NCBI GenBank assembly: GCA_965285935.1
Contig: OZ260666.1
Span: forward strand, 3,162,001-3,226,000
Length of the DNA: 64,000 nucleotides
DNA from: Ophelia neglecta
Lineage: Eukaryota
Direction of reading: 5' to 3'
Under the pieces are notes generated by a model. It saw nothing but the letters and a program-made list of their open reading frames with translations. It searched no databases and was not told the DNA's origin. The translations under genes and the position numbers were made by a program. Shown one piece after another: positions 1 through 32,261 of the stretch. Within the stretch, counting starts at the first letter, position 1; every line of letters starts with the position of its first letter.

Positions 1-65
1 CAGCCAACTGAACCTCTAGCCTGCAGCCAACTGAACCTCTACCCTGCAGCCAACTGACAGCCTAG
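1..65. repeat. 23-bp minisatellite (CAGCCAACTGAACCTCTAGCCTG), cut by the window edge
   Basis: About 3 units visible; reverse complement of the array at 22945-23210. Confidence 0.9.
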
Positions 66-12036: not shown

Positions 12037-15000
12037 AACCTGGCGTAATAAAAAGGTCCCGCCCATTCCACGCTAACTTATCGGCACTGGCCATCATTGC
12101 GATGAAATCCTGAGTAGGATTCTGGTTTAAATTGTATTCTGATTGACATCTTAATGACCAACAATGGAGTACGAGCGATGTATTTAGCAGTTTTGTTTCT
12201 CCAGTGCATTATTTAGTGAAAAAATAGTCTGCATCAAATGGGCATTAGGTATAAGCAAGCTGTCAAATTGTCTTCTTGATAAATGCTTAGGTATATTTAA
12301 CCAATACTATTACAATTCTTAGACAGCGCCATAATTTCTCTGTTGTGTGTGCATCTTGTATTAATTAACCCTTATATCATAGCTAGGTTATCTTTATGTC
12401 ATTGGGACAACAATCAAAAGTAAGTCATTTGATTTATCACTAGCAAGCAGTCGAGTTTATATTCGTATGTATATACACTGAAAAGAAACCCTTCATGTCC
12501 TAAAGATACTTCTATTAATTCATATTGTACGTTAGAATTAATCGATATTAAAATATTAATCGAAGCAGATTTTTTGCACTATACCAATAAAAGTTGCATT
12601 AGCGTCTTCAAACAATGTTTGTTTATTATGAATTCAAGACCTCTGATAGATGTTATAGCCAATCGATGTATTTTAATAAAAGTAAGGCACTTACTTTTGA
12701 TAGAGATGTTCTAAATCGTTCTAACAAGGCTGCACAGTTGGGGCAAAGTTGGCTAATGTGTTCAGGGTTAAGGGTGCGGTTGGTTGGTTGATTGTTTATT
12801 ATAGTAACATAGTGTATACATCTATAAGCATAGAAAGTAAACCCTAAACAAACCAATTACACCCAGCCCTACTGGGCTTATTACAAGTTATAAGTCACCG
12901 GCAAATATGACATTTCATAAAAGGCAAAAAGCTTAGTTCATGGCACAACCTTGCACAGCCTCTCAAAAACCCATCTTTATGTAAGATATGTTTACACAGG
13001 GCATAGCCTACCAGGAAATATAAAGGATATACCAGGATACAATAACATATTAATTCCAAGTACAAGTTCTAAAATCCCAAGCATACTTTATACTTGTTTT
13101 GGAACGCATATAGTCAAAGATTTTCAAGATTAGTGTATACAATTTTAACATAATATCATCGTTTTAACAAACCAGATACACGTTTATGGGTAAAACAAAA
13201 GAATTTACACAACCCAGGCTATAAGAAATGGGTTTAGATCGCTGATATAACGGTAAGGTACGGTACATGCATGGGAGAGTGCGGGTTCGAATCTTATTAG
13301 AAAGGGGCAATTTGCCTCCGCACTTTACGCTCATAATCACAAGCCACCTAGTGCGAAACTGCCTTGGACATATAAGCTGTTAATGTCAGACTCCAAGTAA
13401 AGAATTATAGACGGCAACACTTTTCATATAATTATTTGGTTGTTAGTTTAATTCGTCAATGGCAGATAATGCCCCTTCTAATATACCACATGGAAAATTC
13501 GTACCTATACGACACATTGCGGCCGGATCAATACGGCTTTTTTTACAGGTTAATAATGACTCGTATTTAATACCTCTGCACTGCTTTAGCCGCTTAATTG
13601 ACTGGTTTAAAATACCTGTCAAGCACTCGTGCTTGCTAGTGGTCGCTTTCAGGGCACTTCCGAGCTATCGAGATCTGTTGACAAGTTGTCGTCTGCCATC
13701 AACCAGTCGTCTGTCATAAGCTGTCATGTCAAAAGTTACAATACACTGGGAAGTTGATGCAAAGTTAAGCTGTTCATACATACCTTGTTCAGAACCTGCT
13801 AAATTACAGTATTCAGGGGTTCAAAACGGCTAAAATATCAAGTTTGACCCATGACTTCATAAATATTCCATCTGCTAGCTGGCAGACCTACATTCATTAT
13901 AAAAAACAAACTGAGTTATGTTACTTTTGATCCATTAGTATGTTATTCCTCTAATGCCATAAGTATGTAATTTATGTAATAAGATATAGGGGGAGACGGT
14001 ATCGAATGCCTTACTAAAGACAAAACACCACCAGAACCAATCCGGAATTATCTTGGGAATTCAAATTTATTCACAATAATATTAAGATCCACACAAGTGC
14101 CACGAAAAAAACGGTGTTTATCCCAAGGTCTAACAGTCGTTAATACTGTGATGAACACATCATACTAAATTCTAATATGGGCAGTTTGAAAAGGGGTTAA
14201 TTTCTTTGGCTGTCATATGGGTCTCCCTTTGGAACTCAGGAGTGGGGTGTCCTGCCAGGGCCTATGTTTTGTGTATTGAGCGTGACTCATCATAGTGTCT
14301 GTATCTTACAAACAGGCCGAACCTTACGTGTGTTACGCCGTGTACAATAAAGTTTTATTATATATTGCCATGACTAGGGTATGGTTGTTCAAAACTACTT
14401 ATAACACTTAGTGTAAAATTCTTTTCAGAGCTTTGCACATTTGTTTGCGCAATTTGTACATATAAGGGAATTTAAGTCCTACAGCGGTGAATGTTTCTAG
14501 GTCACCAGGAAGTAGTTTCATGGGTCTACACTTATGCCTATATATGTTTTAAATGTGAGTGTGATATTAATGAAACTCGGCATTTATTATAGGGATTGTA
14601 CGTACACAGTTGGGAAGGTTAAATACATACACTATTAAGAATTGTCAGTCTTAGTAATTAAATCATAACTGTACAAATTGCATTATTTACATATATTGAA
14701 GATATGGTTTTTTTTAGTCTACAATACACTGGTAGAGTCAAATTCGACATGACATTCACTTTATACAAACTCATAGGTTGTGCTGATCACATGACACTCG
14801 CTTTATACTATCTCAATGATTATGCTGATCACATTATTTGCACGATTTCTGTACTATTGATGTTGCTGCCTGGCAGGCAAACTAGTTAATTGGACATTCT
14901 AAGCAATAAATTTTCTCGTCCGCCGAACACTGTGGGCCAAAGCGTAGGCTTGAGAGCGTCAGCGAGCAGCAATGTTTGCGCACTTAACAACAGTAGTTAG

Positions 15001-15920
15001 TTTCCCTACGAGTCCAGCCGGTGACACAGTAATACGTAAGTGAAAGTTTCTTGATTAACCACACATTGTTTATTTTTCGACCAATAATACTTAAATAAAT
15101 CCACGTCAGTTATTTAGAGGTAGTAAAAAGATAGGGATGTTGTCTTGCCGAACTAGCGGGATGTTATAAGTGAAGTTGATTACACGGGGTTGCCGAGGGG
15201 AGGCGGTGGCCCTGGACATTTCTGGAGCGTACAACCTACTGAGGGTTAGGGTCCAGTTTGGTTTAAGAGTTAGCCTGAGGGTTAGGATTATTCAAGTCTG
15301 AGGTGTTTCTCATCCGCCAGACCTCGCCATATCCGGCTTCAATCAAAAGCCGTAACACGTTGGCCCTACACTAAGCTTGCCTGTAGTATTCCCTGAGCAG
15401 AAGACATTTCAAATTTGTAGTGTAACTTAATATATGTTACCGTACACTATAAAATAGCCTTTTCTATAAGTTCTGTTCACAACCAACCTATATAGGACAT
15501 TTTCAGAACATCTATTATTGTAGGCGCTGATCATTGTGAGCTCAACCAGTATGTTAAATATCACGATAAATGGGAGACCTGGAGCAAATTGGCCGATAGT
15601 AATTCATTATATCATTATAATTATCGGCTATTTAACCAGGATATATACATACTTACATTAATACATCAGAGATCTTGGCTGGCTTCCAATACACATCAAC
15701 CTACGCATGGGCCTGGATCTTAAGCGTAGATCTGTGTGGGTTGGGGTTGGAGGGGGTTGGAGTTGGGCTTTGTGTGGGGACAGGGGAGGCTACTGGCCGG
15801 ACAGGGGCCAACCTGTAAAGCGGGAAAGATAAAAAATAATGCTACATAATTAGAATTTTTTTAATAAGAGTAACTTTTACGTAAGTGCTGTAACACATCT
15901 CTGTCAATACCGGCGGTGTT

Positions 15921-16020
15921 CGTGTCCGAAACTCGTGTCAGGAAGTTTCTAGGTAAAAATCGTGTCAGGAAGTTTCTAGGTAAAAATCGTGTCAGAAAGT
16001 TTGTAAGTCTATATATAAAG
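15921..16020 (+). promoter_or_regulatory. Putative promoter of B with triplicated 27-bp CAGGAAGTTTC unit and TATA-like box
   Basis: TCGTGTCAGGAAGTTTCTAGGTAAAAA at 15933 and 15960, degenerate at 15987; TATATATAAAG at 16010-16020. Confidence 0.45.
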
Positions 16021-16236
16021 AGAATTTACTGCATATCATAAATAACGAGAGAGAGAGAAAGTTTACTTTCAAATGAAAGATGGGACGGCAGACAATCAGA
16101 AGGTTTATTCGTTTTTATGTAGTGGAAAAGAGGTTGGTGTGTCTTCCACCGGCTTTCTTTTGATGTTTTTGTCATTGGTAATAGTATATTGATACAAACA
16201 TATTTTTAGGTCTCGGTGAATTTAAGCTGGCCTATG

Positions 16237-19200
16237 ATGGAGACCAAGTCGATCGTACTGCTGGTTTGTCTGTGCAAGGTAGAAGGTGTTATGACTGCAC
16301 CATCGAGTGGTAAGTACTGGAATTTTATACACTGACGTATGTAGAATCTTAGAATCGACTTATGATTAGTCAAGAAGTGTACACCAAGTCTCACTCATTC
16401 ATCATGACTGATCGCTTTCAAGGGTATGTCGTTTTCCGACTATTATTCACATTGGAAGGGTGTTTTCGAATTTCAGCTTCTTCCGGCACAGTCACTAAAG
16501 TCACTAATAGAACCCTACAATTTGCAACTTCCACAGGCACAGTCATTCGAGTGAATATTGGCGACAACGCCACCTTGCGGTGGAAACTGCCGAAGGAAAA
16601 TAGCATAGAGCTCACAAAATGTTATGACACGAACATGATCAACACATTTAACATTGTGAACGTGACGGTGGTATTCAGGAGTGTTAATATGCGCCATGAG
16701 CCTCTCAGTTCAGGGACAAACGAGATCAGCCTAACGATGACATTGACAAATGTCACGAGAGAAGACGCTGGTTCGTACAACTGTCGTCGTACTAACTATA
16801 GTGAAACCAACACTGTTTTTGTCTGGGGTAAGTTCTCCTTTTGATTTTTCTTGACACTGACAGACCATGTGTCTCCTTCTTTTGTGCTTTTTTTGGCTAC
16901 GTAAAAAACAATCTGTGAAGTAGTACATATATTGTCGGACTTTGGTTCTTAACCCTGAAAGAAATAGAATGTTATTTCTTTTTTTTTACCAGGTTCCTCT
17001 TATATCTATTCGTAACTGACTTTACAATCGTTGCAGTAATGTCCATCTTACCATATATAAGTATTTGATAAACCCTTAAATTATATTTTGATTAAGTCTC
17101 TCTTTCCCTTTGTTTGTGCGCCACTTTTTCTTTAAGGTAAAGAATTAGACAATGTAGAAAGAAGGAAAAGATTGCATACCCTAACTTTTTGCATTATCAA
17201 TACCATAAATTTAGTTACGATTGCTTCGTCAAGTTTCAGTATTGGATATACTTTTTTAATTATTAAAAGTTGAAACATCCTCATGATTACACTACAGAAG
17301 ACCACGTGAATTAATTTTTTCACATAGTCAACTACTCATGGATAATACCAACCGTATATTTAAGATTTAAATTGTCTTAGCCATATTTTATACCTATGCC
17401 TTTCGCTCGGTCCATATGATTACATTTTCCGATTATTTTCAGGAAGACCTTTCCCAGCCCTAATAGATTCAGAGGGCTTTAAGTTGATGTGTAACGTCAC
17501 TTCCACTTCTGTGCCAGAAGGCTTTCGAACTCCGATGGCTTACACTTGGTTAAGAGATGGCGCTGTTATCGGAAATACCTCGTTCGAATCTAACTATATG
17601 ATTCCGATATGGAACATTATGAACCCGTTCCATAAATACTCCTGTCTAGGGAGAGAGAATGGCTCTACACTAGTGTCAGACTCAAGTAAGTAACACATAC
17701 TGATCGTGCTTAGCTGCGTGGCTACCAAAACCCATGGAAGTCACAATGCACTGTTGGGTACCGAACGATAATTAACTAAGACGAGTAATGTGGATTTTAC
17801 ATCAGTTTCTGCAAGCATTGCTGAAACACCATTAAAATGAAACAGTTTAAACTTGGTTTAAGTCATCAAGTAATTTCAATTGATATATCGATGTTATGCG
17901 TTAACGATCCGATAATGAGTATGTTTTTTTTCAGGTGGTTTTGTGCAGCTTCCTGTTACCCCAGGCCTGCTGGTGATGATCACGGGATCCTGTGTCCTAA
18001 CCTTACTACTTGTCTTAGTCATACTGCTCTGCTATCGACGTGAGTGTCTTGTCATATCTTCAACCTCGCATTTTATGTTTCAGATTCCCTGTATAACGGA
18101 AATCGTGCTTAGTAAAATAGAATGCATACTCTGGGGATCAAATTATGTATAGAAGAGACATAATCATGCTTTTCGAAACCGTAGTGTGACATTCCGTACT
18201 TAGGAGTATGGGTGCAAAGGGTGAAGCTTTTCATCCGGAAAATCCATCAGGGCTACGCAGAATTTTAGTTACTTAGACTCTTAATCAAAGATTGGACAGA
18301 CCATAATTAAAGAATCATTCCATCAGTCCGTATTCCAAAAATAAGAAGGTCATATTTAGCATTTAAACGCTTCAACGCAAAGAGGCCCTTTTACAATACA
18401 CGTGTTAAAGAAATCCCCACACAGCTTGTTTAAAAACAATGAAAGTAAACATAATAAACTACCTAGTATTACAAAATGCTAAGGTTCTTACTGTATTACA
18501 TATTCGTTGATGTAGTTTACTAAATGGGTCAAGCATACTATCTAAGAAAATCAATATTTTAATGCACCAGTCTGAAATTAGCCAAATTTCTCTTTCATGC
18601 TACACAGTCTGATATAAATAGATCATATAAGATTTATTTCTCAATCAGATAATCACATCTTTATTTTGGTATAGAATCAAAACTAAGACAAGGAGACCGT
18701 CACCAGGCAGACAGCTTTCATGAACGAAGGCGTCGTCAGGAGTCATGCTGCTGTCACGAACAACGCTGCCGCCACGATCCAAACTGTTGTCACCAGTCAA
18801 GGGGGCATCACGAGTCTGGCTGTCGTCACGAGGCACCCTGCCGTCACCGGCCACACTGCTGTCAGGAGCCATCGTGTGGTCACGATCCACGCTGCGGTCA
18901 GGAGCAATCGTGTGGTCACCATCCACGCTGCGGTCAGGAGCCATCGTGTGTTCACGATCCACGCTGCGGTCAGGAGCCATCGTGTGGTCACCATCCACGC
19001 GGTGGTCAGGAGCCATCCTGCCATCACCAGCCATCCGGCCGTCAGGTAGATAACGATGATGATTACGACACGACCATGGTAGAGAACATCATGTTTGACC
19101 CTCAAATGGACGGTGAGCCGATATCCATAATTACTTTCCTCATCATACATTTATATTCATCCCCGGCACCTTTTACTGAATTTGGGTATAAATATTGTTT

Positions 19201-19654
19201 GAATATTAAGTGTGGGTGTACTGTATGGTTCAACAGCTGCAATAAATAACTTTTACCTCAAAGCTATTTCTGAGAAGAAGAGATAAATGAGAGAATGCGC
19301 AGTGAGACCAGCTGAGCCACTGTCAGCGCACAATTGAATTTAAACTACATGCAAAAGTAGTTTTTAACTAAAAAATAAATATAATACTAAGGACCAATAT
19401 ATCCCACGATATATTTTCATGGTATAAACATTTCGATTTGACAACCTTCTCTTCTCAAATTTCTGTTACAACTTTATTTCATTCGACGTCTTTCATTACA
19501 GTTAGAATACTGTTGCAAACTTATTGTTTTCCAAACAGAGGTCAGTGAGTTTGGACAGTCTAATACATTCAGACCTATCGCGTCCGGGTATTCCGAGGTT
19601 TGGGTGCCAGTACCTCCGCTATCTGGGAATACAGCCAGGCAAGGTGAGAAATGA
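16237..19654 (+). CDS. IgSF type-I membrane receptor, paralog B (~441 aa), ITIM-bearing
   Basis: Exons: 16237-16309 (signal peptide), 16477-16827 (V-like), 17443-17685 (Ig2), 17935-18039 (TM), 18675-19112 (Cys/His repeats, CGQEPSCGHHPR x~4; this frame is not in the ORF track), 19539-19654 (EVSEFGQSNTFRPIASGYSEVWVPVPPLSGNTARQGEK*). All GT-AG phase 1. Confidence 0.85.
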
Positions 19655-19785
19655 TGAAACCTGGGTAATCATATCATCAATGATAAATGTTAAGGTCACA
19701 GTATTCTTGCAAAACATTAAAAGGTTAGTCATTTTTTGGAGTTTTGTCTTTGAAATAATAAAGCATGATCCGGAATATAATGTTA

Positions 19786-19957
19786 CAGTGGCACCTGTGT
19801 GTGTGGTCACCTGTGCACTACAGTCACCTGCGCCATAAGGTCACAAATAACAGCCTAATCCCCATGTATGCCTGCGTTAATTGACCTGCTTATGAAGGTC
19901 ACCTACATAATTTGGCAAGTTTTTGCTCTTGCCTGACCTGTTTAAAAGGTTACACTG
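19786..19957. mobile_element. Tc1/mariner (pogo/Tigger-like) MITE
   Basis: TA|CAGTG...CACTG|TA termini with internal GGTCACCTG repeats; not seen at the homologous position downstream of A or D. Confidence 0.6.
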
Positions 19958-20418
19958 TATGACAAAGCTAAGCTGGGTTTGGCAGATCTTAGATGGGCTA
20001 GGAGGCTCTTTATTTTAATTGGTGTTTCAATTTGCTATAGCCTAGCATCCCTGGATACCTATATTCTCGCATGATTAACATGCACTTACCCAAAATGTAA
20101 ATTAAAACCATAATTATGAATTCTGCAGCAAAATCTTCTTCCGGCCGTCTATCGTTTCTCGACCCTCTGAGGTACCTGTATGCTAGTGTGGATAGGAGAT
20201 GGAAGAAAAGGAGTAGACTCGTCCCTGAATGAGACGCTGGGATGCGATGAATGAAGGGGAAGAGGACCAAGGACGCCGGAAGGGGACAAGGATGGGGAGT
20301 GGGATCAGGGACTTTGGGTGGGACCAGGGATCTTCGGGGACTTGGGAGTTTGGTTTCAACCATCCATAGGTCTTTGTACAATTTATTGGAGCGGGTGCCT
20401 TACTTGGGACCAGATCAA

Positions 20419-21051
20419 TAGCCTTGGAATAAGGCCTCAGCGGGTTGGTAGTATGAAATAAAATGGTAACTTTTTTTTTATCTTCCCGCAAGGCCTTGGC
20501 TGAAGCGTCAAGCGCTCGGCCTGACACCTTTACGCAATAAAGGCGCACTACTACCGGTTGAAAAATCAGCCGGTGAACAGCGCATGCGCATCAATACGGA
20601 AGTGTACATTCAACATGTACATTGAATCGAGACGGTCAAAACCTGTGCACGTCGTGATGCTTAGTTGGAAAAATAATACACATTATCTAGCATGTCAAGC
20701 ACCAGTCTTAATGTCAATTGAAGTAAACCTATTTCTATCATTATTAACACATCATATTTTAAAGACTGATTTGCATAAATACATAAATAATGCGTTTGTT
20801 TACCTGTTTAACTTCGCCAGCGTCCCGAGTCCGTCATATTGCAAATCCACGTGTCACGTGACACGACTGACGTCACGGAAGCTCATTAATATTAAGTCCG
20901 CTCATGAATTATTCATAGCGAGCATGATCAGGCGGCCCGTACAAGGCTACGAGGGATGTAGATAGTAAACACCGTTTATAGTAAAAACATGACTTTTATT
21001 GATTTATCATACATTTTGAAGGAATCAGTGAGTAGCATTGTGGCAAGGCTA
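20419..21051. mobile_element. Non-autonomous DNA transposon with 9-bp TSD (AcademH-like termini)
   Basis: TIR TAGCCTTG/CAAGGCTA; exact TSD CCAGATCAA at 20410-20418 and 21052-21060. Confidence 0.75.
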
Positions 21052-22729
21052 CCAGATCAATGACGGGGAAGGGAAGGACTGCGGAAGGGGAACAGGGACT
21101 TTGGATGGGGTGGCGCTATTTGGTTCGAATTATCCTTGGGGCTGGGTAATACAGATGGAGGCAGATGCCTTATACGGGATCTGGCATATTGAGTGAAACC
21201 AGGGTTTTTGTATAGGATCGGGGATTTTAAGTGGGTTCGGGGATCTTGGGTGGTGCCGGGGACCTTGGGTTAGGTAAGGGACCTGTGGTGGGAACGCAGA
21301 TCTTGGGGACTATAGCCCTTTGTTGAGATCGGGGATTCCAGATGCTAACGAAGAGCTTTTGTAGTATGGGGTGCCTTGAAGGGGATTTGGATCTGCAAAC
21401 TTTTTGAATATTATGCTTGAAGCAGGGTTTATAACTATTAACGAGGGTGGTGTCAATATGCCAATGTGCCTTGAACATAGCTAGCGCGGGACTATAATTA
21501 TCGTCCTTAACATATACGACTGATAATATTTTATTGGAAACAGAAAACATAACGGCTTCCTGATAAATTAGGGCGGTTTAGTTACAACAAGTTAAAACTT
21601 TGGTTTTAAACAAAGATTATTTATATATGCTAAATTCACTAACAATAAAAGCAATACAAATTCCACAGTTTTTGGAATAAATACAGTATAATGTATAAAT
21701 TGATCAAAACTCAATCTATTATCACATCAAAAGAATTCCGCAACCTCCTTGAGATAGAAAAAAAAATCAAAAGTTTGTTTTTTACCAGAAAAGAGGCAAA
21801 AGGTAGGCTCGCGCGGACGGTACCCAAAGTATGTACTTTTCATGGCCGTAGATTTGACATTCAATGACACTCTGAATTCTATATAATTACATTTCCTGTG
21901 TTTATCGAGAATGCTTTTATTATTGTTCTTCTATTGTTGGTAATTTGACACCGCTTAATAACTACACAATGAATTTGTAAACATAGTTAATGCACTGTAT
22001 CAAAATATATGACTATTCATGCCAATTGTTTTGTAAAAAATAAAATACTTGCTTAGTTGTGAAGTCTAAGCTTTAGACCAAATGTATCTTTAATTTTCAA
22101 GCCTATATCTGTCAGACATGTTAAATAGTGATTTACTTTGTATATAGAATATGTAAAGATTAAAATGTTTTTAAAAATGCCAGTTACTTTAGTTGTTAGA
22201 TCTATAAGGAAAATATATGTCATAATATGGAGTATTTTTCATCCATTGTCTTACTCCTACAATGACTTACAACCAGAATATTCACCAAAGGTCGCGCATC
22301 CATTTGGGAAGGCCACGTACAAATGTGCTCAAAAAAGTATTTTCTATAAAATCAACACCATCCTTAAACACGCCCTAATTTATACAAATTAGATTTAACA
22401 AAACCCAGGATGGCCAAATCACTTATATTAACTAAATACATCGAAAAGTGTAAAGTTAACGCACGTTTTATTTGCTCTACGAGCTGTCTAATAGGTACCG
22501 GCTGATTCTGCTGAATCTAAACAATTATTTTTAAATAAAAGGGTGTTTTGAATGATCATGAGCTAGTATAAAGGCACAGGTGTTTCATTATACGCTGCCG
22601 GGATCTACCTTTTCGTGCGATGATCATAAAACGCGATGTATATACTCTCCTTTTATGCTTAGGATACCGATATGTCTATATTCAAAACGGTGGTATTTAA
22701 ATTTGCTCCAGATAATCTACACAGACGTC

Positions 22730-22761
22730 TGACGTCACGATAGTCGCCTTAGACTACCAAT
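22730..22761 (+). promoter_or_regulatory. CRE (TGACGTCA) plus CCAAT box; candidate promoter of paralog C
   Basis: Motifs at 22730-22737 and 22757-22761. A downstream donor AA|GTAAGT at 23243 could splice to the acceptor TTATTCAG at 24571, just before C's ATG. Confidence 0.35.
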
Positions 22762-22944
22762 CGCTTGTACTGATAACAACAATTGCTCGATATCCGAAAT
22801 GTGTCTGACTGTAGGAAACTTAGTTAATTGCCATATAAATTACTAATTTTTCCCGTTCTGAAACAATGTAGGCCGGGACGAACGTTCACGCTATTAGAAA
22901 ATAGGTCTGTTTGTATGCTTCAACGCAGTTTTCCGCTAGGCTGT

Positions 22945-23210
22945 CAGTTGGCTGCAGGCTAGAGGTTCAGGTGGCTGCAGGCTAGTGGTTCAGTTGGCTG
23001 CAGGCTAGAGGTTCAGTTGGCTGCAGGCTAGTGGTTCAGTTTGGCTGCAAGCTAGAGGTTCAGTTGGCTGCAGGCTGGAGGTTCAGGTGGCTGCAGGCTG
23101 GAGGTTCAGTTGGCTGCAGGCTAGAGGTTCAGTTGGCTGCAGGCTGGAGGTTCAGTTGGCTGCAGGCTGGAGGTTCAGTTGGTGACAAGCTAGGAGTTCA
23201 ACTGGGAGCA
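22945..23210. repeat. 23-bp minisatellite, ~11-12 copies
   Basis: CAGTTGGCTGCAGGCTAGAGGTT head-to-tail with no spacers. Confidence 0.9.
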
Positions 23211-23681: not shown

Positions 23682-24597
23682 CAGCACCTTATTAACCATG
23701 TATTGTATGGGAAATATGGGACACAGGTCTATACAAGTAATAACCAAACTGGGTTATCAAATACATAGATACATCACATTCCTTGGCCACCATCCAACAC
23801 GGAACAACATGGAGTTTGCCCTGGAACTGAGACGGCATGGTTGGAGGAAAGGGGTGAGTTGGTGGTTTGGTGGAGGGGGGTTGGGGGTTGGTAGTGGTGG
23901 TTGGGGGGGGGAGTGGGGGGGGGGCGGAGTTTACGGAAAGGCTGCTTAGCGTGTGATCTGATGGATTATCTAATTTATTCATTTAGTCAGCAGATCACTT
24001 CACCACACTCCTACATTATTCAAGCTATATATATAAAATGTTTGTTTAATGACCGAGCGCCTTCCTGTAATATATATCTGGCAAGCGCAGATGATATCCT
24101 CCCGGAAATTACTGTCACATATTAGATGTTGAGGCAGACATTTAGATGGATGACATCATCGTTATTTAGGTGGGTGTTTTCTACTAGCTATTTCCTTTTG
24201 GCACGAGTTTTTGAGTTAAGAGACGCACCATTAGATCACTAGACGGGAGCATGGAGGGGGATAGGGAGTAGGAGGATGGGGAAAGAAGATTGCTTACAAA
24301 TAAACTGTTTTTAAATTCATGATAAAGATTTTTTTTTAAGTTTGTAAAAAAACGGTATAACGGTTTTTCATTTACTTCGGCTTAAAACACATATTTTCTC
24401 CCCAGAAGTTGCGAACAATTTTTTGCTTCAAAATTTTCTAGCCCCCCCCCCCCCTTCTGCTTCCCCTTGATTTCAAATTGATCGGGCAATGCTCATTTTT
24501 ACTACACGTTACAGTTTTATATCATCTATTAAATGTGTAAGACAAAGATATGTTTAAACCATGTTATTCAGGTCTACACATATTAACGCCTGCAATA

Positions 24598-27500
24598 ATG
24601 GGGTCCGAGTTGATCGTCCTACTTCTATGTCTGTGCCATGTAGCAGATGTTATGACCGCACCAGCTAGTGGTAAGTACCGCACCACCTAGGGGTAAGTAC
24701 CGCACCAGCTAGTGGTAAGTACAGCACCAGCTAGGGGTAAGTACCGCACCACCTAGTGGTAAGTACCGCACCACCTAGTGGTAAGTACCACACCAGCTAG
24801 TGGTAAGTACCGCACCAGCTAGTGGTAAGTACCGCACCAGCTAGTGGTAAATACCGCACCAGCTAGTGTAATTTACCACACCAGCTAGTGGTAAGTTCCG
24901 CACCAGCTAGTGGTAAGAACCGCAACAGATAGTGGTAAGTACCGCGCTACCCAGTGGTAAGCACCGTGCCGCCTTTGTGGTAAGTACCCAACCACTTTGT
25001 GGTGAGTACCACGCCACCTTGTGTTAAGTACCCATCCATCTAGTGGTAAGACCCAGAATGGTGTAATGACTTGGGTTAGTAAGGTATTGGACGCCTTAAT
25101 ATGTCTGTGTTTAAAGGATAAAGATAAAGGTGTTTTCTGAATCATATTCACATTTGAAGAAGGCAAACATTATGAAGATGGATTTATTTATAACTTATAG
25201 AACCCTACAATGTGTAACTTCCACAGGTACAGTCACTCGAGTGAATATTGGCGACAACGCCATCCTGCGGTGGAAACTGCCGAAGGAAAATGACATAGAA
25301 CCAACAAAATGTTATGACACGAACAAGAACAACACATTTAACATTGTGAACATGACCGTGTTACCCAAGAGTGGTAACTTCAGCCTGGGCTTGTCTGAGC
25401 TTTTGAATGCAGGGAGAAACGAGATCAGCCTAACAATGACATTGACAAATGTCACGAGGGAAGACGCTGGTTCGTACAAATGTCGTCGTACTAGCTATAG
25501 TGAAACCAACACTGTTTTTGTCTGGGGTAAGTTTCCTTTGGGTTTTTCCGTGGCCCTGAAAGACTATGTGTCCGATATTTTAATTGGCGACTGAAAAAAC
25601 AATCAGTGAACTAGTAAATATATCGTCGTATTTTAGTATAAGTAAGACTTTCTTAATGATTTCTTTCATTAAATGTCTCCTCCCGTTTATTTTCTTCATG
25701 GTGAAGAATAGGACAATGTAACTCTCCTTTTCTAGAAGGAAAAATAAATATGCAACCTCAAACGTGTTTAATAATCGATATGAAAATAAACTATACTTCG
25801 AGCCATCCAGCAAACCATTAATCATAACATTTAGGTGTTCAAATATTTTACTGTTTTATCATATATATCAAGTAGTATCTTTAAATTTTAAAATGGTCAA
25901 GTAACTGCTATATTTTATACTTATCGCCCTCACTGGGTGCGATGGAATGAATTCATATCATTATGTTTGCGTTGCAGGAAAACCAACTCCAGCCATAATT
26001 GATACAGAGGGTTTAAAATTAATGTGTGACGTCATTTCCACCTCTCTACCAGACTACGTTCGACCTCCGATGACTTACAGTTGGTTACGAGATGGCGCTT
26101 TAATCGGAAAAACCACGGATGAGTCTACCTATACGATACCCATACACAGCATATTTAACCAGTTCTCTGAATACTCCTGTCGAGGGAGGGAGTATGGCTC
26201 AAGTCTACACTCAGACTCAAGTAGGCAAAACACATTAATAGTGGCTAGCAATATGGCTAAGCAAAACTGATTAAATTCATATCGACAACTTGCTATGGAA
26301 CGCTTGTATATTGGCGAACAGGGTATATTTGTCCAATGTGCTGCAACCCGCTGCCAAAAGTACCAATTGGAAAGCTGATAAATCCTTTGTCATGTACGAG
26401 GGGCGGAGAGGTGGGAATTACAGTCTATTAAGAGGTCGATCCCAAGTTTCGGAAATACTCCTGCCCCCCCCCCCCCCCCAACCCCGCAACTTGTATAGGG
26501 AGTATGTTAATCGTATGGTCAATATTAACATTACACACTATTTTGAACAATATACAAACGAGTTCTGCTATAATCCGCTTGCAGAACCGGATTGTCTACA
26601 ACTTTCCTACCCCTCGATCGTTTGTGTTTATTATACGAATATGAGCGTTTGTGTTTTAGGTGGCTCTGTACGGCTTCCTGTCTCTCCAAGACTGGTGGCG
26701 ACAATCGCAGGATTTTGTGCCATAACAATCCTTACACTACTTGTCGCACTATCCTGCTGTCAACGTGAGTGTATTTTCATTTCTTCAAAGTTAAGCACGT
26801 GTTCATATGCATTAAACTCCCTTGATATCATCGCAACCGTATCTCAATATTATAAATAACATTACTTGAGGGACTGACATAACAAGAATTCACAAAGATC
26901 TATTAGACTAAAGTTTAACACTGCTTTTATATTACATGTACATAATATAATATTATCTTACTGCCATTTTATCTTACACTATCTCGGCGCATCAAATTGT
27001 TATCTTTCCGAATCAAATAATCTTATTTTAATTTTGTTCTAGATTCAAAACAAAGAAAGCGAGCTGCATCAAGTTCCGTCACAAACGAACACGATCGTCA
27101 GAAGTCAGGTTGTCGTCACGAGAAACGCGACCGACACGAGCCAGGCTGCCAACACGAACCCATCTGTCGTCAGAAGTCAGGCTGCCATCATGAACCTATC
27201 TGTCGTCAGAAGTCAGGCTGCCATCATAAACCCATCTGTCGTCAGAAGTCAGGTTGCCATCACGAACAACGCTGCCATCATAGCCAAAGCCGTCACGAAT
27301 CAAGCTACAATCAAGCACCTAGTTGTTGTCACGAGGAAGGTTGCCGACCTAATCCCCGCTGTCTTCAAGAGACACTCAGCCGTCATGAGTCAAACCCCCA
27401 TCTGGAGACGACACTCCATGGTAACGAGCCGCCCAACCGTCAGAACAATGATGAACATGTTGAGAGCATCACGGTAGAGAAGAGCGCCACGTTTCAGCCT

Positions 27501-27849
27501 CAATTGGAGGGTGAGTTTAAGGCCATTATTTGACCGGCTAGTATAGTGAAGTGTTTCCGCGAGCTCTCATTATCCTGCCTGACATCCCCATTTGTCAGAC
27601 TATTCCACTGACTAAATCAAGCGTCCAATATCCTTCAAACTTCTTTACTTTTGCGTTAAAACTATTCTTTCACAATAATCGAAACTTCCTAGATGAATTA
27701 ATTAATGTTTCTTCATTTTCTAATTCGTGTCTTAACCACCAGAGGCCAGCGAGGGACAGCCTAGCACAGTCTTACCTACAGAAGTTCGATATTCATTTGT
27801 TTGGGTACCACGACCTCCGCCTTGTGTGCAGAAAGCGACCCAAAAATGA
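24598..27849 (+). CDS. IgSF type-I membrane receptor, paralog C (~431 aa), ITIM-bearing
   Basis: Exons: 24598-24670 (signal peptide MGSELIVLLLCLCHVADVMTAPAS), 25227-25526 (V-like), 25978-26220 (Ig2), 26660-26764 (TM), 27043-27510 (Cys/His, CRQKSGCHHEPI x3), 27743-27849 (EASEGQPSTVLPTEVRYSFVWVPRPPPCVQKATQK*). Confidence 0.85.
24655..25051 (+). repeat. 22-bp minisatellite spanning the exon 1/intron 1 junction of C (~18 copies)
   Basis: Unit ACCGCACCAGCTAGTG|GTAAGT, degenerating toward the 3' end. Confidence 0.9.
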
Positions 27850-30831
27850 AGACACCTATTCGCAAATACCAATAAAAAAGTAATTCCAAATTTTATCCCA
27901 AAATAATTAACGGCTTTATTGACTGTTGATGTTCGTCTGTGAAATATTAAACGACATGCAGTCGCACTTAATAATATGCATTAATATATAACAACAATGG
28001 GACTACTATATGTACTGAGGTGCTTATGCTGTGGCATGCTATGTTATGCTATGCTTCTCTGGTTTAGCCCCATATTGGGCTCTTGGGGTTTGTCTCGGAG
28101 GATTCTGTGGGGACTTAGCTTCCCTTCTGATATGGGAACCCTTTGCACAATCACCAAATGACAGCGGATATCTCTATAAGTAAGCCCTAGATTCGCCGTC
28201 AGGACGAACAGACGTCTTTACTTTTATATAAAGATGATTTTCATGATAGGGACTTAAATGGGACCGTTCCTTTCCTTTAACTCCAGAAAAAACACGCTCC
28301 TACATTTTATCTCATTTGAAAATACACGGTTCCCTTTATCTATCACCAGAAAACACTTTCCCACACACTATCGGCCGGAAATACTACGTTTCGTATCAAT
28401 CAAGCATATTTTTTATGCTTTTTTGAGTTAATACCGTAAAAAAGGGGATAGTGTTGCGTGGTTGCAATATTTTGACGGTAAAAAAAAGTATAACATAGGT
28501 GAACACAATATAAAAAATAAGTATCATTGTACCCATTATGTACCCTTGGTTCTTGCAGGTCCCCTATAAAGTTTTCCTCTGTGTCGCTGGGTTCTTTTTG
28601 GTCTCGTGTATAGTTTTTATCAGTTTCGCTAGAGTACCAGCTAGTCTCCTCTAGAGTTTTTATCAGTGTCACTTGGTTCCCTACAGTGTTTTCCATGAAT
28701 GGTATCTGCTGGTCCCCTCTAGAGTTTTCCGCCGTGTCGCTGGGGTCAGGCGTAAATATTGAATCAGTCGGTATATTACAAATCAACTTAACTCCAATGC
28801 CAGTACTATCAAGAAGTTAAGCTTTTCGTTGCCATTTCAATTAATTACTTGGGCAACTCCAAATGGTTTTAAGAATACGGAGCCTTTTACGCTGCTATGC
28901 CCTTGTAGACGGAAGTGCCACAAAATGTACATTTGATTTTATAAATTTTTAAGACGTGTTATTTGTCCGTTTGCTATGAATTTTATTATTATAAAAATGT
29001 GATTTATCTAATTTGTTTCATGCGACATTCCAATTCAACTTGTTTCGCACTATCTGTATTTAGTGACACAAATAGAATTATTCAAGCAAAAAACAACATG
29101 CTTTTCCATTGTTTATTTAACCCTTTACAGAAGAATATGAGGAATTTAATGCGTTTAGAAATAACAAAATAATACAGCAAACGATGATGCTCAGTGTCTA
29201 GGGATGTTATGTCTTTGTGTTAGCTGATAAGGTCTTATAACGGTATTCATCACATTAAGCTGAATATTATAAAAACAATAATATTAGAATAACTGTAAAT
29301 CTATGCGAATATTATATACAAATCAGTAGTGTATTGTCCATTTTATAGCTTTTCTTCACATCTAAGTAAATATGAGTATAATAATTAGTAGGACAATTAT
29401 TACATCGGTTCTTCATAATAATATTATTTCAGTGCTAATTTCAATATTATTTATTAAGTAACTAGTATAGTAGCCGCCAAAACGAAATTCATCCCATCAA
29501 TCTGAGTATAAGACAAAATGAATGACAGTCGTTATAACGGTAGTGAACACAACATGTTAAATTGAAATATTAACAATATATGAGCAAGTATCTTAATAAT
29601 CGTAATGATGGTTGTTCTTACTGAATATGGTATAAACAGTGAGTAGTACAATACTACTAATCCTAGATAATATTGATAACCAGTTCTGGGTAATCTGTAA
29701 TCTGATGGAAATCAAAGAGAGGCAAAATAGTTTTGCCGCCGCTGCGATAAGACTTGTAATACATATAACATAATAGAAGGATGCTCCTCACAAATGTGGC
29801 GTTGTTTTGTTCAAACTGGGTTTTTACATTAAACATTTTACCAGTTTTGCCTGCCATTTCCATAAAGCAGGGGGCAGAGCCAGGTTCGGCAACTTTTCAT
29901 ACAAGTGGTAGCCGATTATGTTGCTTTTGCAGTCCATGGCCATGCTGCCTTCTAAAACGCGTAACATAATTGATTATTCTTTTCCGATTATTCTTGTGAA
30001 TTCTTAGTACATTGGGCTTCACTTTGTTCTGGTAAGTCGCGGAATCGCGTCAGATGTACTTTGTGTTTCGATACCTAGTTCTACTTAGAACTAAACATTT
30101 ATATAATGCATGTTAAGTAATTAGCAATAAGTTTTTCTGTATTACGTCCAAAAAAGTGTGTACGCCTTTAAAGGTATCATGTTCCCTAGGCAGCATAATC
30201 TAGCAGACAAGTAAGGTAAGGACGTCATTCAACTATGTTTTGGCATATCCTGATCATTTATGATAGGTACATGATAATCTGTACTGTATTGTTAATATAA
30301 AGCATTGGTAGTTTGAACATCTTAAATATAGAAATTTAACTAATTTGTGCCTGCATTTAAAAGACACTTTCTAACACCCTCGTAGCTTATGGCATTTATT
30401 TTTATCCTATATTACACTTCCGCGAGAAGGAACCAACGCACTTTGTCATGTGTAAATACCCTGTTATCGTATCGGGAATATATCTCCATTAATCATTATT
30501 GCCTGCCAGAGACTTGTGCCCGGAAATTTTACCTCTCCGTGACTGGGAAACATAAAACGGAGGTGGAGGGAGAGCAGTCATTTTTAATAACCGAGGCGAA
30601 CATTTCATGAATTTATTACATTTCATGTTGATAAAAGAGACAGAGCGGCATGTTTTTTGTTACTGATTTATGATAAATTGTAAGTCAAACAATTAGAAGG
30701 TCGATTAACCTGATATGTCGTAGAAAGTGGTCGGCGTTTGTTGTCAACAAGCTATTTCCTATGGGAATTCTCACATATGGCAACGTGTTAATTGATTAAT
30801 AACACTATAGGGTTCCGTGTGCCTTAGCTTA

Positions 30832-30986
30832 GTATGAAATGTTCAACATTCCTGTATGAAATGTTCAACATTCTTTTATGATAATTGTAACATTCCTGTA
30901 TGAAATGTCTATCATTCCTGTATTAAATGTCAAACATTCCTATATGAAATGTCTAACATTCCTGTATTAAATGCCAAACATTCCTG
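30832..30986. repeat. 22-bp tandem repeat, ~7 copies
   Basis: TGAAATGTTCAACATTCCTGTA units; only ~2 copies in the inverted homologous flank at about 8190-8228. Confidence 0.8.
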
Positions 30987-31838
30987 ATCTAGATGAATTG
31001 CAATTCTTTGCTAGCAAAATCTACCAGTTGAAATATATTAAAAACATCGACGATATGTTATTTAAAATAAATTAAATTAGTCGAGACAGATTCGAGGGGA
31101 CACTTGCCTTATACTTACTGCATGGTTGTACTCATCACATGACACTCGCCTTATATTAACCCACGCTTATCACAGATTCCGTTGCCTTCATGTGGCTGCT
31201 GGAAGGTAACACTCATTAGTTAGTGAGAGTTAGGAAAAAGAGAGGGATGCAGTGTCTAACTATAGGGACTTTATATGGAATATTGATTAAACGCGGAGGT
31301 ACGGAGGCTAGGCGATGGCGGAGGTCATGGTAAATTCTGGACGGCATGAAGTGTACTTGCGGCTGAAGGTGTCGAATTGAGGTTAATTTTATGGCTAGAC
31401 TGTGGTTAAGATTATTCAAGGCTAGCGTGTAGCCTGATTGTAGGTTTCATCTTCGTAAATCTCCGCATCATTATAATCTTATTTATCACAGGGATACATA
31501 CATACATACGTTTTTTGGTGTCTACCATTACACATCAACCTGAAACAGAGCCCTCACATGGTTCAGGACGGGTTGTGATTGGATAGAAGGGGTCAGGAGA
31601 GGAAGGAATGGGGTGAGTGGGAGTGGGTTTATGGGCGCCTAGAAAGGGTCCAACCTGTACAGTTGTAAAGATATGTGGCCCTATCGTTAGGAAAAACAAT
31701 TCATTAGATCTTGTAAATGAAACCACCCACTCCAAGTCCTCAAAATTATGCCCCCCTTTCCACATGAAGTTATATTTACGTAGGTGCTATATATAAGATA
31801 ATATTTGCTCAAGTGTATCTGTCAATACCCGCAGAGAT

Positions 31839-31882
31839 CGTGTCGGAAACTCGTTACGGGAAGTTTCTATGTCTATATATAA
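31839..31882 (+). promoter_or_regulatory. Putative core promoter of D
   Basis: GGGAAGTTTC at 31858-31867 and TATATATAA at 31874-31882; homologous to the A and B upstream blocks. Confidence 0.4.
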
Positions 31883-32261
31883 CTAGAATTGGCTACATTA
31901 TCATGTAGATAACAGAGAGAGTGCGACTGGCCTTGTCAATGTATAGATGGAAAGGCACACAACTAGAGATATGGATTACTTGTTAATTGGTGGAAAAGAT
32001 GTGGGTGTATGTTATCAACCCACTATTTCCTTCCAGAATTTTCACATTTGGACACGATATTAAAAGTGCATATACACCTTTAGCTTCCGCGGGTCATAGG
32101 CCTACATTTACATGGACTTTCAAGCAATATGACTACTCGCTGAGCGCATATTATTCCTTGTGTAGGGTGCCGTATATTTGTGTGATTAACAAGTGTATTG
32201 ATAAACAAACAGCTGACTAATGCCCTGTTTTTAGGTGCCAGTGAAAATAAGCTTGCATGGG

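What the first reader, a model, noticed from the sequence alone, without database searches (positions are those of the whole stretch)
16477..17400. Paralog B is a chimera: a C-type V exon inside an A/D-type gene, with a visible junction
Seen: B's promoter, intron 1, Ig2, Cys/His exon and last exon resemble A/D, but its V exon and the start of intron 2 resemble C. Exon 2 begins with the A/D-type start (CAG|CTTCTTCCGGCACAGTCACT) and at about 16508 switches to C's intron end and acceptor (AGAACCCTACAA...ACTTCCACAG|G.ACAGTCA.TCGAGTG). This leaves two in-frame acceptors (16476 and ~16536) and a duplicated SSGTVT/STGTVI. Inference: gene conversion or exon exchange re-pairs ligand-binding domains with signalling tails.
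Basis: partly seen in the sequence, partly recalled or inferred. Interest (0 to 1): 0.75.

Follow-up and report, generated by a model that had tools for sequence, protein, structure and literature searches.

The report
Patchwork Ig receptor gene, visible join
One gene in a large tandem family of invertebrate immunoglobulin-type receptors carries a short piece copied from a neighbouring gene type, joined so imprecisely that the end of the donor's intron and its splice site now lie inside the exon; this is a clear example of a well-known process.

Summary
The join is real. Exon 2 of gene B (16477-16827) opens with the start shared by all 8 B-type genes of the genome. At ACTA (16503-16506) it jumps into the last 34 bases of a C-type intron 1 and runs through the C-type acceptor (AG 16535-16536) into C-type V-exon sequence. 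The result is 60 extra in-frame bases and two acceptors.

- **Exon start:** the "A/D-type start" is the normal B-type start.
- **Imported tract:** it is short, 95 to about 160 bases (16503 to 16597-16660), not the whole V exon. Its best donors are C-type genes of other repeat units (0 of 54 differences), not C itself.
- **Intron 2 start:** it is B-type (0 of 119 differences to L003), not imported.

The broader pattern, a V exon nearer C and the rest nearer A/D, holds for all B-type genes. It reflects V-exon homogenisation between B- and C-type genes. The PHI test is significant. Trees are discordant, but AU tests are not significant.

B's flanks also differ in history: 84-94% identical to its nearest relatives upstream, 98-100% downstream.

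No RNA data or long reads were available. The scan noted other hybrid paralogues elsewhere in this genome, but not this one. This is a known kind of event with a well-mapped footprint.

The parts
15100..16502 (+). 5' island of B: part of the promoter, exon 1, intron 1 and the first 26 bases of exon 2. It is B-type but has no close relative apart from copy B2.
   Evidence: It is 84-94% identical to every other B-type copy, while both flanks are 98-100% identical to L003-5. In the tree B+B2 sit on their own 0.058 branch.
16244..16310 (+). Exon 1 (start codon and signal-peptide-like part), ending with donor GTAAGT.
   Evidence: Read. It is 92-97% identical to other B-type genes and 73-81% to C and A/D types.
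16475..16476 (+). First acceptor AG, the normal B-type acceptor.
   Evidence: It aligns with the acceptor of the six other B-type loci and of the A/D-type loci.
16477..16827 (+). Exon 2 (V-type Ig domain), 351 bases, phase 1 at both ends. It is 291 bases if the second acceptor is used.
   Evidence: Pfam ig PF00047 scores 27.5 bits against a cut-off of 21.8.
16477..16506 (+). Standard B-type start of exon 2 (residues ..SSGTVTKVT).
   Evidence: Same start in L003-L007 and L016. The first 26 bases are 81-96% identical to them.
16503..16506 (+). ACTA, the bases shared by the B-type exon and the C-type intron at the join (microhomology).
   Evidence: Alignments. A C-type contig of the reads departs from B exactly before 16503 (table 7).
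16503..16536 (+). Imported last 34 bases of a C-type intron 1. It holds a branch-point-like CTAAT (16504-16508) and the second acceptor AG (16535-16536).
   Evidence: It is exact in four C-type genes and in B and B2 only. C itself has 3 mismatches, with 0 matches expected by chance. The branch-point reading is inferred.
16537..16597 (+). C-type V-exon sequence, the minimal extent of the imported tract.
   Evidence: 16537-16556 shows 0 of 20 differences to L008, L009, L010 and L012, against 6-8 of 20 to B-type genes. At 16589 and 16597 B has the C-type base where all six other B-type genes differ.
16598..16700 (+). Zone of uncertain parentage. It is C-like up to 16656 if L003 is taken as the B-type parent. 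16661-16700 is nearest L015, L017 and L007.
   Evidence: The max-chi2 break lies between 16656 and 16665 (p=0.002) with L003/L008 as parents, and between 16599 and 16600 (p=0.087) with L007/L008. In 16661-16700 the differences are 2 of 40 to L015, 7 to L003 and 9 to L008.
16701..16827 (+). 3' part of the V exon, of the L003-5 B-type lineage.
   Evidence: 2 of 127 differences to L003, against 7-12 to L008, L009, L010 and L012.
16828..17442 (+). Intron 2. It is B-type throughout. Its first roughly 120 bases are distantly like C-type introns in all B-type genes.
   Evidence: 0 of 119 differences to L003 and 38-80 to C-type genes. 96-100% identical to L003-5.
17443..17685 (+). Ig2 exon, 243 bases, phase 1 at both ends.
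   Evidence: 99.6% identical to L003-5, 82-86% to A/D types and 75-77% to C types.
25193..25526 (+). C in the window: end of intron 1 (25193-25226) and V exon (25227-25526). This is the in-window counterpart of the imported piece but not its closest donor.
   Evidence: C (L018) shows 3 of 34, 2 of 20 and 9 of 104 differences, where L008, L009, L010 and L012 show 0, 0 and 6.

Best explanation
B is a genuine germline mosaic made by recombination between non-allelic members of a tandem receptor family.

What the sequence shows:
- Exon 2 starts as every B-type gene does.
- At ACTA (16503-16506) it continues with the last 34 bases of a C-type intron 1, the C-type acceptor, and at least 61 and at most about 125 bases of C-type V-exon sequence.
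- It then returns to B-type sequence of the L003-5 lineage, which runs on for about 5 kb.

Most likely mechanism (inferred):
1. A break in exon 2 of a B-type gene was repaired by copying from a C-type paralogue.
2. The right-hand end was resolved inside the V exon, where B- and C-type genes are alike.
3. Copying to the left ran past the point where the likeness stops, because B-type intron 1 is of the A/D kind.
4. That end therefore could not be closed by homologous annealing and was joined at 3-4 bases of microhomology.

The net effect is 60 extra in-frame bases. They bring a second acceptor with its own branch-like motif and pyrimidine-rich run. If the first acceptor is used, the protein gains 20 extra N-terminal residues, including a new N-R-T glycosylation sequon.

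The event predates the duplication that made copy B2, 435 kb away. It is one episode in a continuing exchange of V-exon sequence between B-type genes, which carry a tyrosine-motif exon, and C-type genes, which lack it.

Shown: the sequence relations. Inferred: mechanism and direction. Untested: which acceptor is used.
For: - The 60 extra bases occur in 2 of 8 B-type loci (B and B2). The other six are colinear with C and A/D types at this point.
- The 34-base intron piece is exact in four C-type genes, where it lies in their intron. The 54 bases 16503-16556 show 0 differences to those four genes.
- The 28-base join occurs at 2 places in the 762-Mb assembly with up to 2 mismatches. The control pattern gave 0.
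- Within the exon, for the triplet B/L003/L008, 15 of 17 informative sites left of 16656 are C-like and 11 of 14 to the right are B-like. Max-chi2 is 14.1, permutation p=0.002.
- B and B2 differ at 31 sites and one gap over 9428 bases and both carry the join.
- Contigs of three read sets cover all 30 bins with no joint. The only loose ends at the join belong to C-type and canonical B-type copies.
- The PHI test on 14 distinct B/C-type V exons gave 0.247 observed against 0.308 +/- 0.018; 1 of 2000 permutations reached it.
- V-exon identity is 87.2% for B-C against 72.4% for B-A/D. Ig2 identity is 76.9% for B-C against 82.3% for B-A/D. All three types are equally far from eight outgroup genes: 54-55% in V and 61-62.5% in Ig2.
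- The abstract of PMC5104497 describes microhomology-mediated rejoining when gene conversion ends where the second end has no homology.
Against: - The two flanks of the patch do not share one history. B is 84-94% identical to L003-5 upstream (15100-16500) and 98-100% downstream. A simple two-parent conversion is therefore not the whole story, and the order of events is unresolved.
- No present copy is an exact donor for 16557-16660. The best are L014 with 4 of 104 differences and L008, L009, L010 and L012 with 6.
- With L007 instead of L003 as the B-type parent, the max-chi2 test is not significant (p=0.087).
- The three read sets come from one sample, which may be the sample the genome was assembled from. 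They are short contigs, and no listed piece was shown to bridge the join.
- No RNA run was found, so nothing is known about splicing or expression.
- The AU-test groups were named after the trees had been seen.
Confidence: 0.7

Rival explanations
1. Two successive unequal crossovers rather than copy-repair. First, an illegitimate crossover at ACTA between exon 2 of a B-type gene of a now unsampled lineage and intron 1 of a C-type gene made a hybrid gene. Then a homologous crossover in the V exon, with a B-type gene of the L003-5 lineage, restored a B-type body.
For: This accounts directly for three parents: the 5' island is 84-94% identical to all B-type copies, the patch is C-type, and the 3' 5 kb is 98-100% identical to L003-5. 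The cluster is a tandem array of at least 8 units of B-, C- and D-type genes, which is prone to unequal exchange.
Against: Far upstream (14500-15100) B is again 98-100% like L003-5, so at least a third exchange is needed. Sequence alone cannot tell crossovers from conversion, and the end product is the same.
Confidence: 0.2
2. Assembly artefact: the join is a mis-assembly among near-identical paralogues.
For: The region is highly repetitive, with 41 V-exon matches in about 1 Mb. Word depth is raised over 16470-16970. No long-read evidence was available.
Against: The same join stands at two loci that differ at 31 sites over 9.4 kb and have different right-hand neighbours (D against its counterpart is 93% identical). 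No joint or loose end from the B side was seen at the join in three read sets. The reading frame is kept.
Confidence: 0.04
3. The double-acceptor form is ancestral for B-type genes, and the six other genes lost 60 bases.
For: Removing 60 bases from B would give the canonical B-type start (read).
Against: The canonical start is colinear, base for base, with the A/D and C types, so the loss would have to restore colinearity exactly. The six genes belong to three lineages. To the right of the insert B carries C-type bases at 15 of 17 informative sites.
Confidence: 0.03
4. No exchange: the pattern reflects unequal rates of divergence among exons.
For: With A and D as sisters, a four-gene unrooted tree is the same for all exons. 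AU tests on V and Ig2 with outgroups do not reject one tree: holding B+A/D together in V gives p=0.058 (protein) and 0.33 (DNA), and holding B+C together in Ig2 gives p=0.28 and 0.17.
Against: It cannot explain an intron end inside an exon. B, C and A/D types are equally distant from eight outgroup genes in both exons. The PHI test is significant.
Confidence: 0.03

Closest known systems
Paired receptors kept alike by gene conversion: Siglec-11/Siglec-16 (PMC5701461, abstract read). Also CEACAM families (PMC2832619, PMC5112662) and CD300A/C (PMC12447643), for which only the listing and the start of the abstract were seen.
   Same: These are tandem Ig-superfamily receptor genes in which the exon for the N-terminal binding domain is repeatedly converted between partners with different cytoplasmic tails, while the rest of the genes stays distinct. 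Here V exons of B- and C-type genes are 87% alike and intermingled in the tree, while their Ig2 exons are 77% alike and form separate clades.
   Different: This is an invertebrate family with no relatives found in protein databases. No activating feature was identified in the C type. Co-expression and ligand are unknown. The partners stand in at least 8 repeated units. Homogenisation is patchy (82-91% identity), not near-identity.
Non-canonical termination of gene conversion by microhomology-mediated end joining (Hartlerode et al. 2016, PMC5104497, abstract read).
   Same: Copying from the donor runs into sequence that has no homology with the second end, so the end is rejoined at a few bases of microhomology, sometimes with template switches and complex breakpoints. 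B shows a 4-base join, homologous resolution on the other side, and a possible third source in 16661-16700.
   Different: That work used reporter constructs and sister chromatids in cultured mammalian cells. Here the product is a natural germline event between paralogues, and the mechanism is inferred from the product alone.
Hybrid C-type lectin receptor gene CTLR3 elsewhere in this genome (scan note s1-739870, an unchecked AI note).
   Same: It is a tandem immune-type receptor cluster of the same animal with a mapped hybrid gene shared by several copies. That note judged it a well-mapped example of a known process.
   Different: That join lies in intron DNA and splits the domain in halves. 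Here the join lies inside an exon and imports an acceptor. I did not examine that locus.
Allorecognition (Alr) Ig-superfamily gene complex of Hydractinia (PMC9546547; listing and start of abstract only).
   Same: A large clustered family of unusual invertebrate Ig-superfamily receptor genes.
   Different: No homology was tested. The animal here is probably not a cnidarian: the nearest protein-atlas clusters are mostly molluscan, which is a weak lead.

Membership tests
Interlocus (non-allelic) gene conversion or mosaic paralogue | Adjacent segments of one gene have different nearest relatives | tested here: met
   Painting, trees and AU tests (upstream p=0.0076, downstream p=7.7e-6).
Interlocus (non-allelic) gene conversion or mosaic paralogue | Clustering of parental sites is more than chance | tested here: met
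   Max-chi2 p=0.002-0.006 for 5 of 7 parent pairs. It was not significant for 2 of 7 (L006/L008 p=0.105, L007/L008 p=0.087). PHI: 1 of 2000 permutations reached the observed value.
Interlocus (non-allelic) gene conversion or mosaic paralogue | The donor type still exists unchanged (non-reciprocal transfer) | tested here: inconclusive
   Four C-type genes hold the first 54 bases exactly. No copy matches the next 104 bases exactly (best 4 differences). Reciprocity cannot be judged from one assembly.
Interlocus (non-allelic) gene conversion or mosaic paralogue | The tract is bounded by homology on both sides (canonical conversion) | tested here: not met
   The left end joins a B-type exon to a C-type intron at ACTA only. 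The event is therefore a non-canonical conversion or an illegitimate crossover.
Paired receptors homogenised by gene conversion | Binding-domain exon is much more alike between partners than the rest of the gene | tested here: met
   V exon B-C identity is 87.2% (within B 89.5%). Ig2 B-C identity is 76.9%, TM 65-68%. No promoter or 3' similarity was found.
Paired receptors homogenised by gene conversion | Partners carry opposing signalling tails | tested here: inconclusive
   The exon with the S-G-Y-S-E-V motif was found in A, D and 3 of 3 other B-type loci and in 0 of 6 C-type loci at E<=0.01. No activating motif or charged membrane residue was sought systematically.
Paired receptors homogenised by gene conversion | [quoted passage not shown] | not testable with these tools
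   No RNA run was found.
Immunoglobulin V-type domain | Match to curated Ig domain models above their cut-offs | tested here: met
   PF00047 ig scores 27.5 bits against a cut-off of 21.8. V-set PF07686 scores 21.9 bits, below its cut-off of 26. Ig fold is therefore met; V-set in the strict sense is not.
Tandem alternative 3' splice sites | Two in-frame AG acceptors, each with upstream signals | tested here: met
   AG at 16475-16476 and 16535-16536, 60 bases apart with an open frame. The second is identical over 34 bases to the working acceptor region of four C-type genes.
Tandem alternative 3' splice sites | Both acceptors are used in transcripts | not testable with these tools
   No RNA run holds the stretch.

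The most novel reading that the evidence does not exclude
In each of at least 8 tandem units, a B-type gene with an inhibitory-type tyrosine motif and its C-type neighbour without that exon form a paired-receptor system. Their binding domains are kept alike by recurrent V-exon conversion. This would be an independent invertebrate invention of the vertebrate paired-receptor arrangement. B's join marks the fixed left border of the converting block, and the imported acceptor gives B two N-terminal isoforms.
Probability: 0.25. Interest if true: 0.6.

Novelty: new member of a known kind. Interest (0 to 1): 0.35.

Why it matters
The locus gives a base-exact natural footprint of how sequence moves between receptor paralogues. 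Copying ran beyond the block of likeness, was closed at four shared bases, and carried an intron end and a splice acceptor into an exon.

It also shows that in this orphan invertebrate receptor family the V exon evolves as a shared pool between two gene types whose tails differ. That is the pattern that defines vertebrate paired receptors.

For annotation, B and B2 need two alternative exon-2 models. Trees built from whole genes of this cluster will be misleading.

Tried and rejected
- **Four-gene topology test.** A and D are sisters everywhere, so the unrooted tree is the same for every exon. I used other genome copies and eight outgroup genes instead.
- **G-type copy as outgroup.** The copy just beyond the window proved to be a broken C-like fragment: only the last 31 residues of the V exon, and a TAG stop in Ig2. 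I dropped it as an outgroup.
- **Protein database search.** A search with the V exon found nothing. Its length filter excludes full-length proteins, so this says little.
- **Protein atlas.** It gave only generic Ig/V-set clusters, mostly molluscan. I use this as a weak lead on the taxon.
- **AU tests at family level.** They were not significant, so I do not claim a proven old exon swap.
- **Read sets.** They are short contigs from one sample with no RNA. They could not prove bridging of the join, allele state or acceptor usage.
- **Polarity of the 15100-16700 island.** I could not tell whether B or the L003-5 lineage was overwritten. All four B-type lineages are about equally distant there.
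- **Supplements.** Supplementary files of papers were not consulted, and none bears on a claim here.
Full report
**Setting.** The window is C9:3162001-3226000 of a 762-Mb invertebrate assembly. It holds four two-Ig-domain receptor genes:
- A, minus strand, about 8900 to 1
- B, 14600-23200
- C, 24550-27600
- D, 30300-36250

B's exons were read directly:
- exon 1: 16244-16310
- exon 2 (V-type Ig): 16477-16827
- Ig2: 17443-17685
- membrane exon: 17935-18039
- then a Cys/His-rich exon and an exon with an S-G-Y-S-E-V motif

The V exon passes Pfam's ig model at 27.5 bits against a cut-off of 21.8.

**The observation inside the window.**
- B 16503-16946 matches C 25193-25637 at 83.0%. The same exon is 72.5% identical to D and 70.5% to A.
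- Elsewhere B is nearer A/D: the Ig2 block is 80% against 75%. Promoter, Cys/His and 3' blocks match only A/D.
- Two AG acceptors, at 16475-16476 and 16535-16536, lie 60 bases apart and are both in frame. The translation reads SSGTVTKVTNRTLQFATSTGTVIRV without a stop.
- The 34 bases before the second AG match the end of C's intron 1 with 3 mismatches. No such match occurred in 100 shuffles.

**What the rest of the genome adds.** The V exon has 41 matches in a cluster at C9:3.07-4.14 Mb, arranged as repeated units of a B-type, a C-type and a D-type gene. There are eight B-type genes.

I aligned 30 loci at the start of exon 2:
- The six other B-type genes (L003-L007, L016) have the same acceptor and the same first ten codons as B. 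They then run straight on into the conserved V sequence, base for base colinear with the C and A/D types.
- Only B and one further locus, B2 (435 kb away), have the 60 extra bases.
- In all 11 C-type loci the 34-base piece is the end of their own intron 1.

The "A/D-type start" is therefore simply the B-type start, and the oddity is an import of C-type sequence into B. The join is at ACTA (16503-16506), which the B-type exon and the C-type intron share. The 28-base join occurs only twice in the assembly, with a control count of 0.

**Extent and donor.** Differences from B, by segment:

| Segment | C-type L008/9/10/12 | Other copies |
|---|---|---|
| 16503-16556 | 0 of 54 | C itself 5 of 54 |
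| 16557-16660 | 6 of 104 | L014 4; L007 8; L003 11 |
| 16661-16700 | 8-9 of 40 | L015 2; L003 7 |
| 16701-16827 | 7-12 of 127 | L003 2 |
| first 119 bases of intron 2 | 55-80 | L003 0; all C-type genes 38-80 |

- For the triplet B/L003/L008 there are 31 informative exon sites. Left of 16656, 15 are C-like and 2 B-like. To the right, 3 are C-like and 11 B-like (p=0.002).
- With L007 as the B-type parent, the break moves to 16599/16600 and p is 0.087.
- At 16589 and 16597 B has the C-type base where all six other B-type genes differ.

The imported tract is therefore 16503 to at least 16597 and at most about 16660. It is not the whole V exon, and it does not reach intron 2. The four best donors are the C-type neighbours of L003, L004, L005 and L006, not C.

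**Flanks.**
- From about 16700 to about 21700, B is 98-100% identical to L003-5, and again at 14500-15100.
- Between 15100 and 16500 it is only 84-94% identical to any B-type copy.
- Trees agree. Upstream, B+B2 sit on their own branch of 0.058. Downstream they fall with or within the L003-5 clade at 100/100 support.
- AU tests reject the opposite groupings (p=0.0076 and 7.7e-6). The groups were named after the trees were seen.

B therefore has at least three sources, and the C-type patch sits at the right edge of a 1.6-kb island of separate origin. I could not tell whether B or the L003-5 lineage was overwritten there.

**Is it real DNA?**
- B and B2 differ at 31 sites and one gap over 9428 bases and both carry the join. 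C and its counterpart are 99.1% alike, but D and its counterpart only 93%. The two loci are thus distinct places, not one sequence written twice.
- Three read sets were found. All come from one sample, are stored as short contigs and include no RNA.
- They cover all 30 bins of 14800-19800 without a joint. The loose ends at 16503, 16556 and 16834 are what C-type and canonical B-type copies would give.
- No listed contig was shown to bridge the join, and the sample may be the one the genome was assembled from. This is weak support only.

**The family-level pattern.** I took eight more distant genes that have both exons as outgroups.
- The V tree puts B- and C-type exons in one mixed clade (89/93 protein, 75/94 DNA), sister to A/D.
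- The Ig2 tree puts B-type with A/D (75/73 protein, 90/88 DNA) and C-type outside.
- Seven of the 32 rows had no full Ig2 exon in the fetched stretch and were left out of that tree.
- AU tests do not reject one common tree: V p=0.058 and 0.33; Ig2 p=0.28 and 0.17.

Distances are clearer:

| Exon | B-C | B-A/D | C-A/D | To outgroups |
|---|---|---|---|---|
| V | 87.2% | 72.4% | 73.1% | 54-55% |
| Ig2 | 76.9% | 82.3% | 77.3% | 61-62.5% |

Because all three types are equally far from the outgroups, no lineage is simply faster. The PHI test on 14 distinct B/C-type V exons (48 informative sites) is significant: 1 of 2000 permutations reached the observed value.

I read this as continuing, patchy homogenisation of the V exon between B- and C-type genes. 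It is a property of all B-type genes, not of B alone.

The tails differ. The tyrosine-motif exon was found in A, D and 3 of 3 other B-type loci, and in 0 of 6 C-type loci.

**Mechanism.** The likeness between B- and C-type genes begins about ten codons into exon 2, because B-type intron 1 is of the A/D kind. A repair that copies a C-type V exon leftwards and overshoots this border has no homologous partner for its end and must be closed otherwise.

A 4-base microhomology join, with the donor's intron end carried along, is the expected product. The abstract of Hartlerode et al. 2016 (PMC5104497) describes this for gene conversion that terminates where the second end has no homology. Two successive unequal crossovers would give the same product, and I keep that as the main rival.

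The imported piece includes CTAAT 29 bases before the AG. This fits the general branch-point consensus (my own knowledge), so the second acceptor may be complete. Its usage is untested.

**Comparison and verdict.** Conversion of the binding-domain exon between receptor partners with different tails is well known in vertebrates. Examples are Siglec-11/16 (PMC5701461, abstract) and the CEACAM and CD300 families (listings and abstract starts only).

The scan has noted other hybrid paralogues in this genome (s1-739870, s1-736089, both unchecked), but not this locus.

The finding is a real and nicely resolved example of a known process in a little-known invertebrate receptor family.

Noticed in passing
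window 24655-25051: Intron 1 of C begins with a minisatellite of about 22-base units. Each unit repeats the end of exon 1 plus a GTAAGT donor. It is also noted by the scan as s1-742007.
   Followed up: no
window 20420-21050: A stretch of about 600 bases in B (and B2) has no colinear match in the six other B-type loci. It may be an insertion specific to this lineage.
   Followed up: no
L038 1717-1809 and 2205-2390 (C9:3227717-3228390, just beyond the window's end): A broken C-like gene fragment. Only the last 31 residues of the V exon remain, and the Ig2 exon has a deletion and a TAG stop. Six near-identical copies are spread through the cluster.
   Followed up: partly
L008-L012 (C-type loci), about 2200-2400 in each: In five C-type genes only the first 137 of 243 bases of the Ig2 exon match, so their second Ig domain may be cut short or replaced.
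   Followed up: no
C9:3609216-3631666 (L031, L019, L026) against window 12573-35626: A second copy of the B-C segment lies 435 kb away at 99.1-99.7% identity. The D-type gene next to it is only 93% like D, so the duplication is itself mosaic.
   Followed up: partly
whole assembly, mostly C9 and C1: At least 150 Ig2-like exons were scored out of 285 candidates, so this receptor superfamily is very large in this genome.
   Followed up: no
window 1-57 and 23036-23200: A 23-base tandem repeat is shared by the 3' ends of A and B, at 91-96% identity between copies.
   Followed up: no
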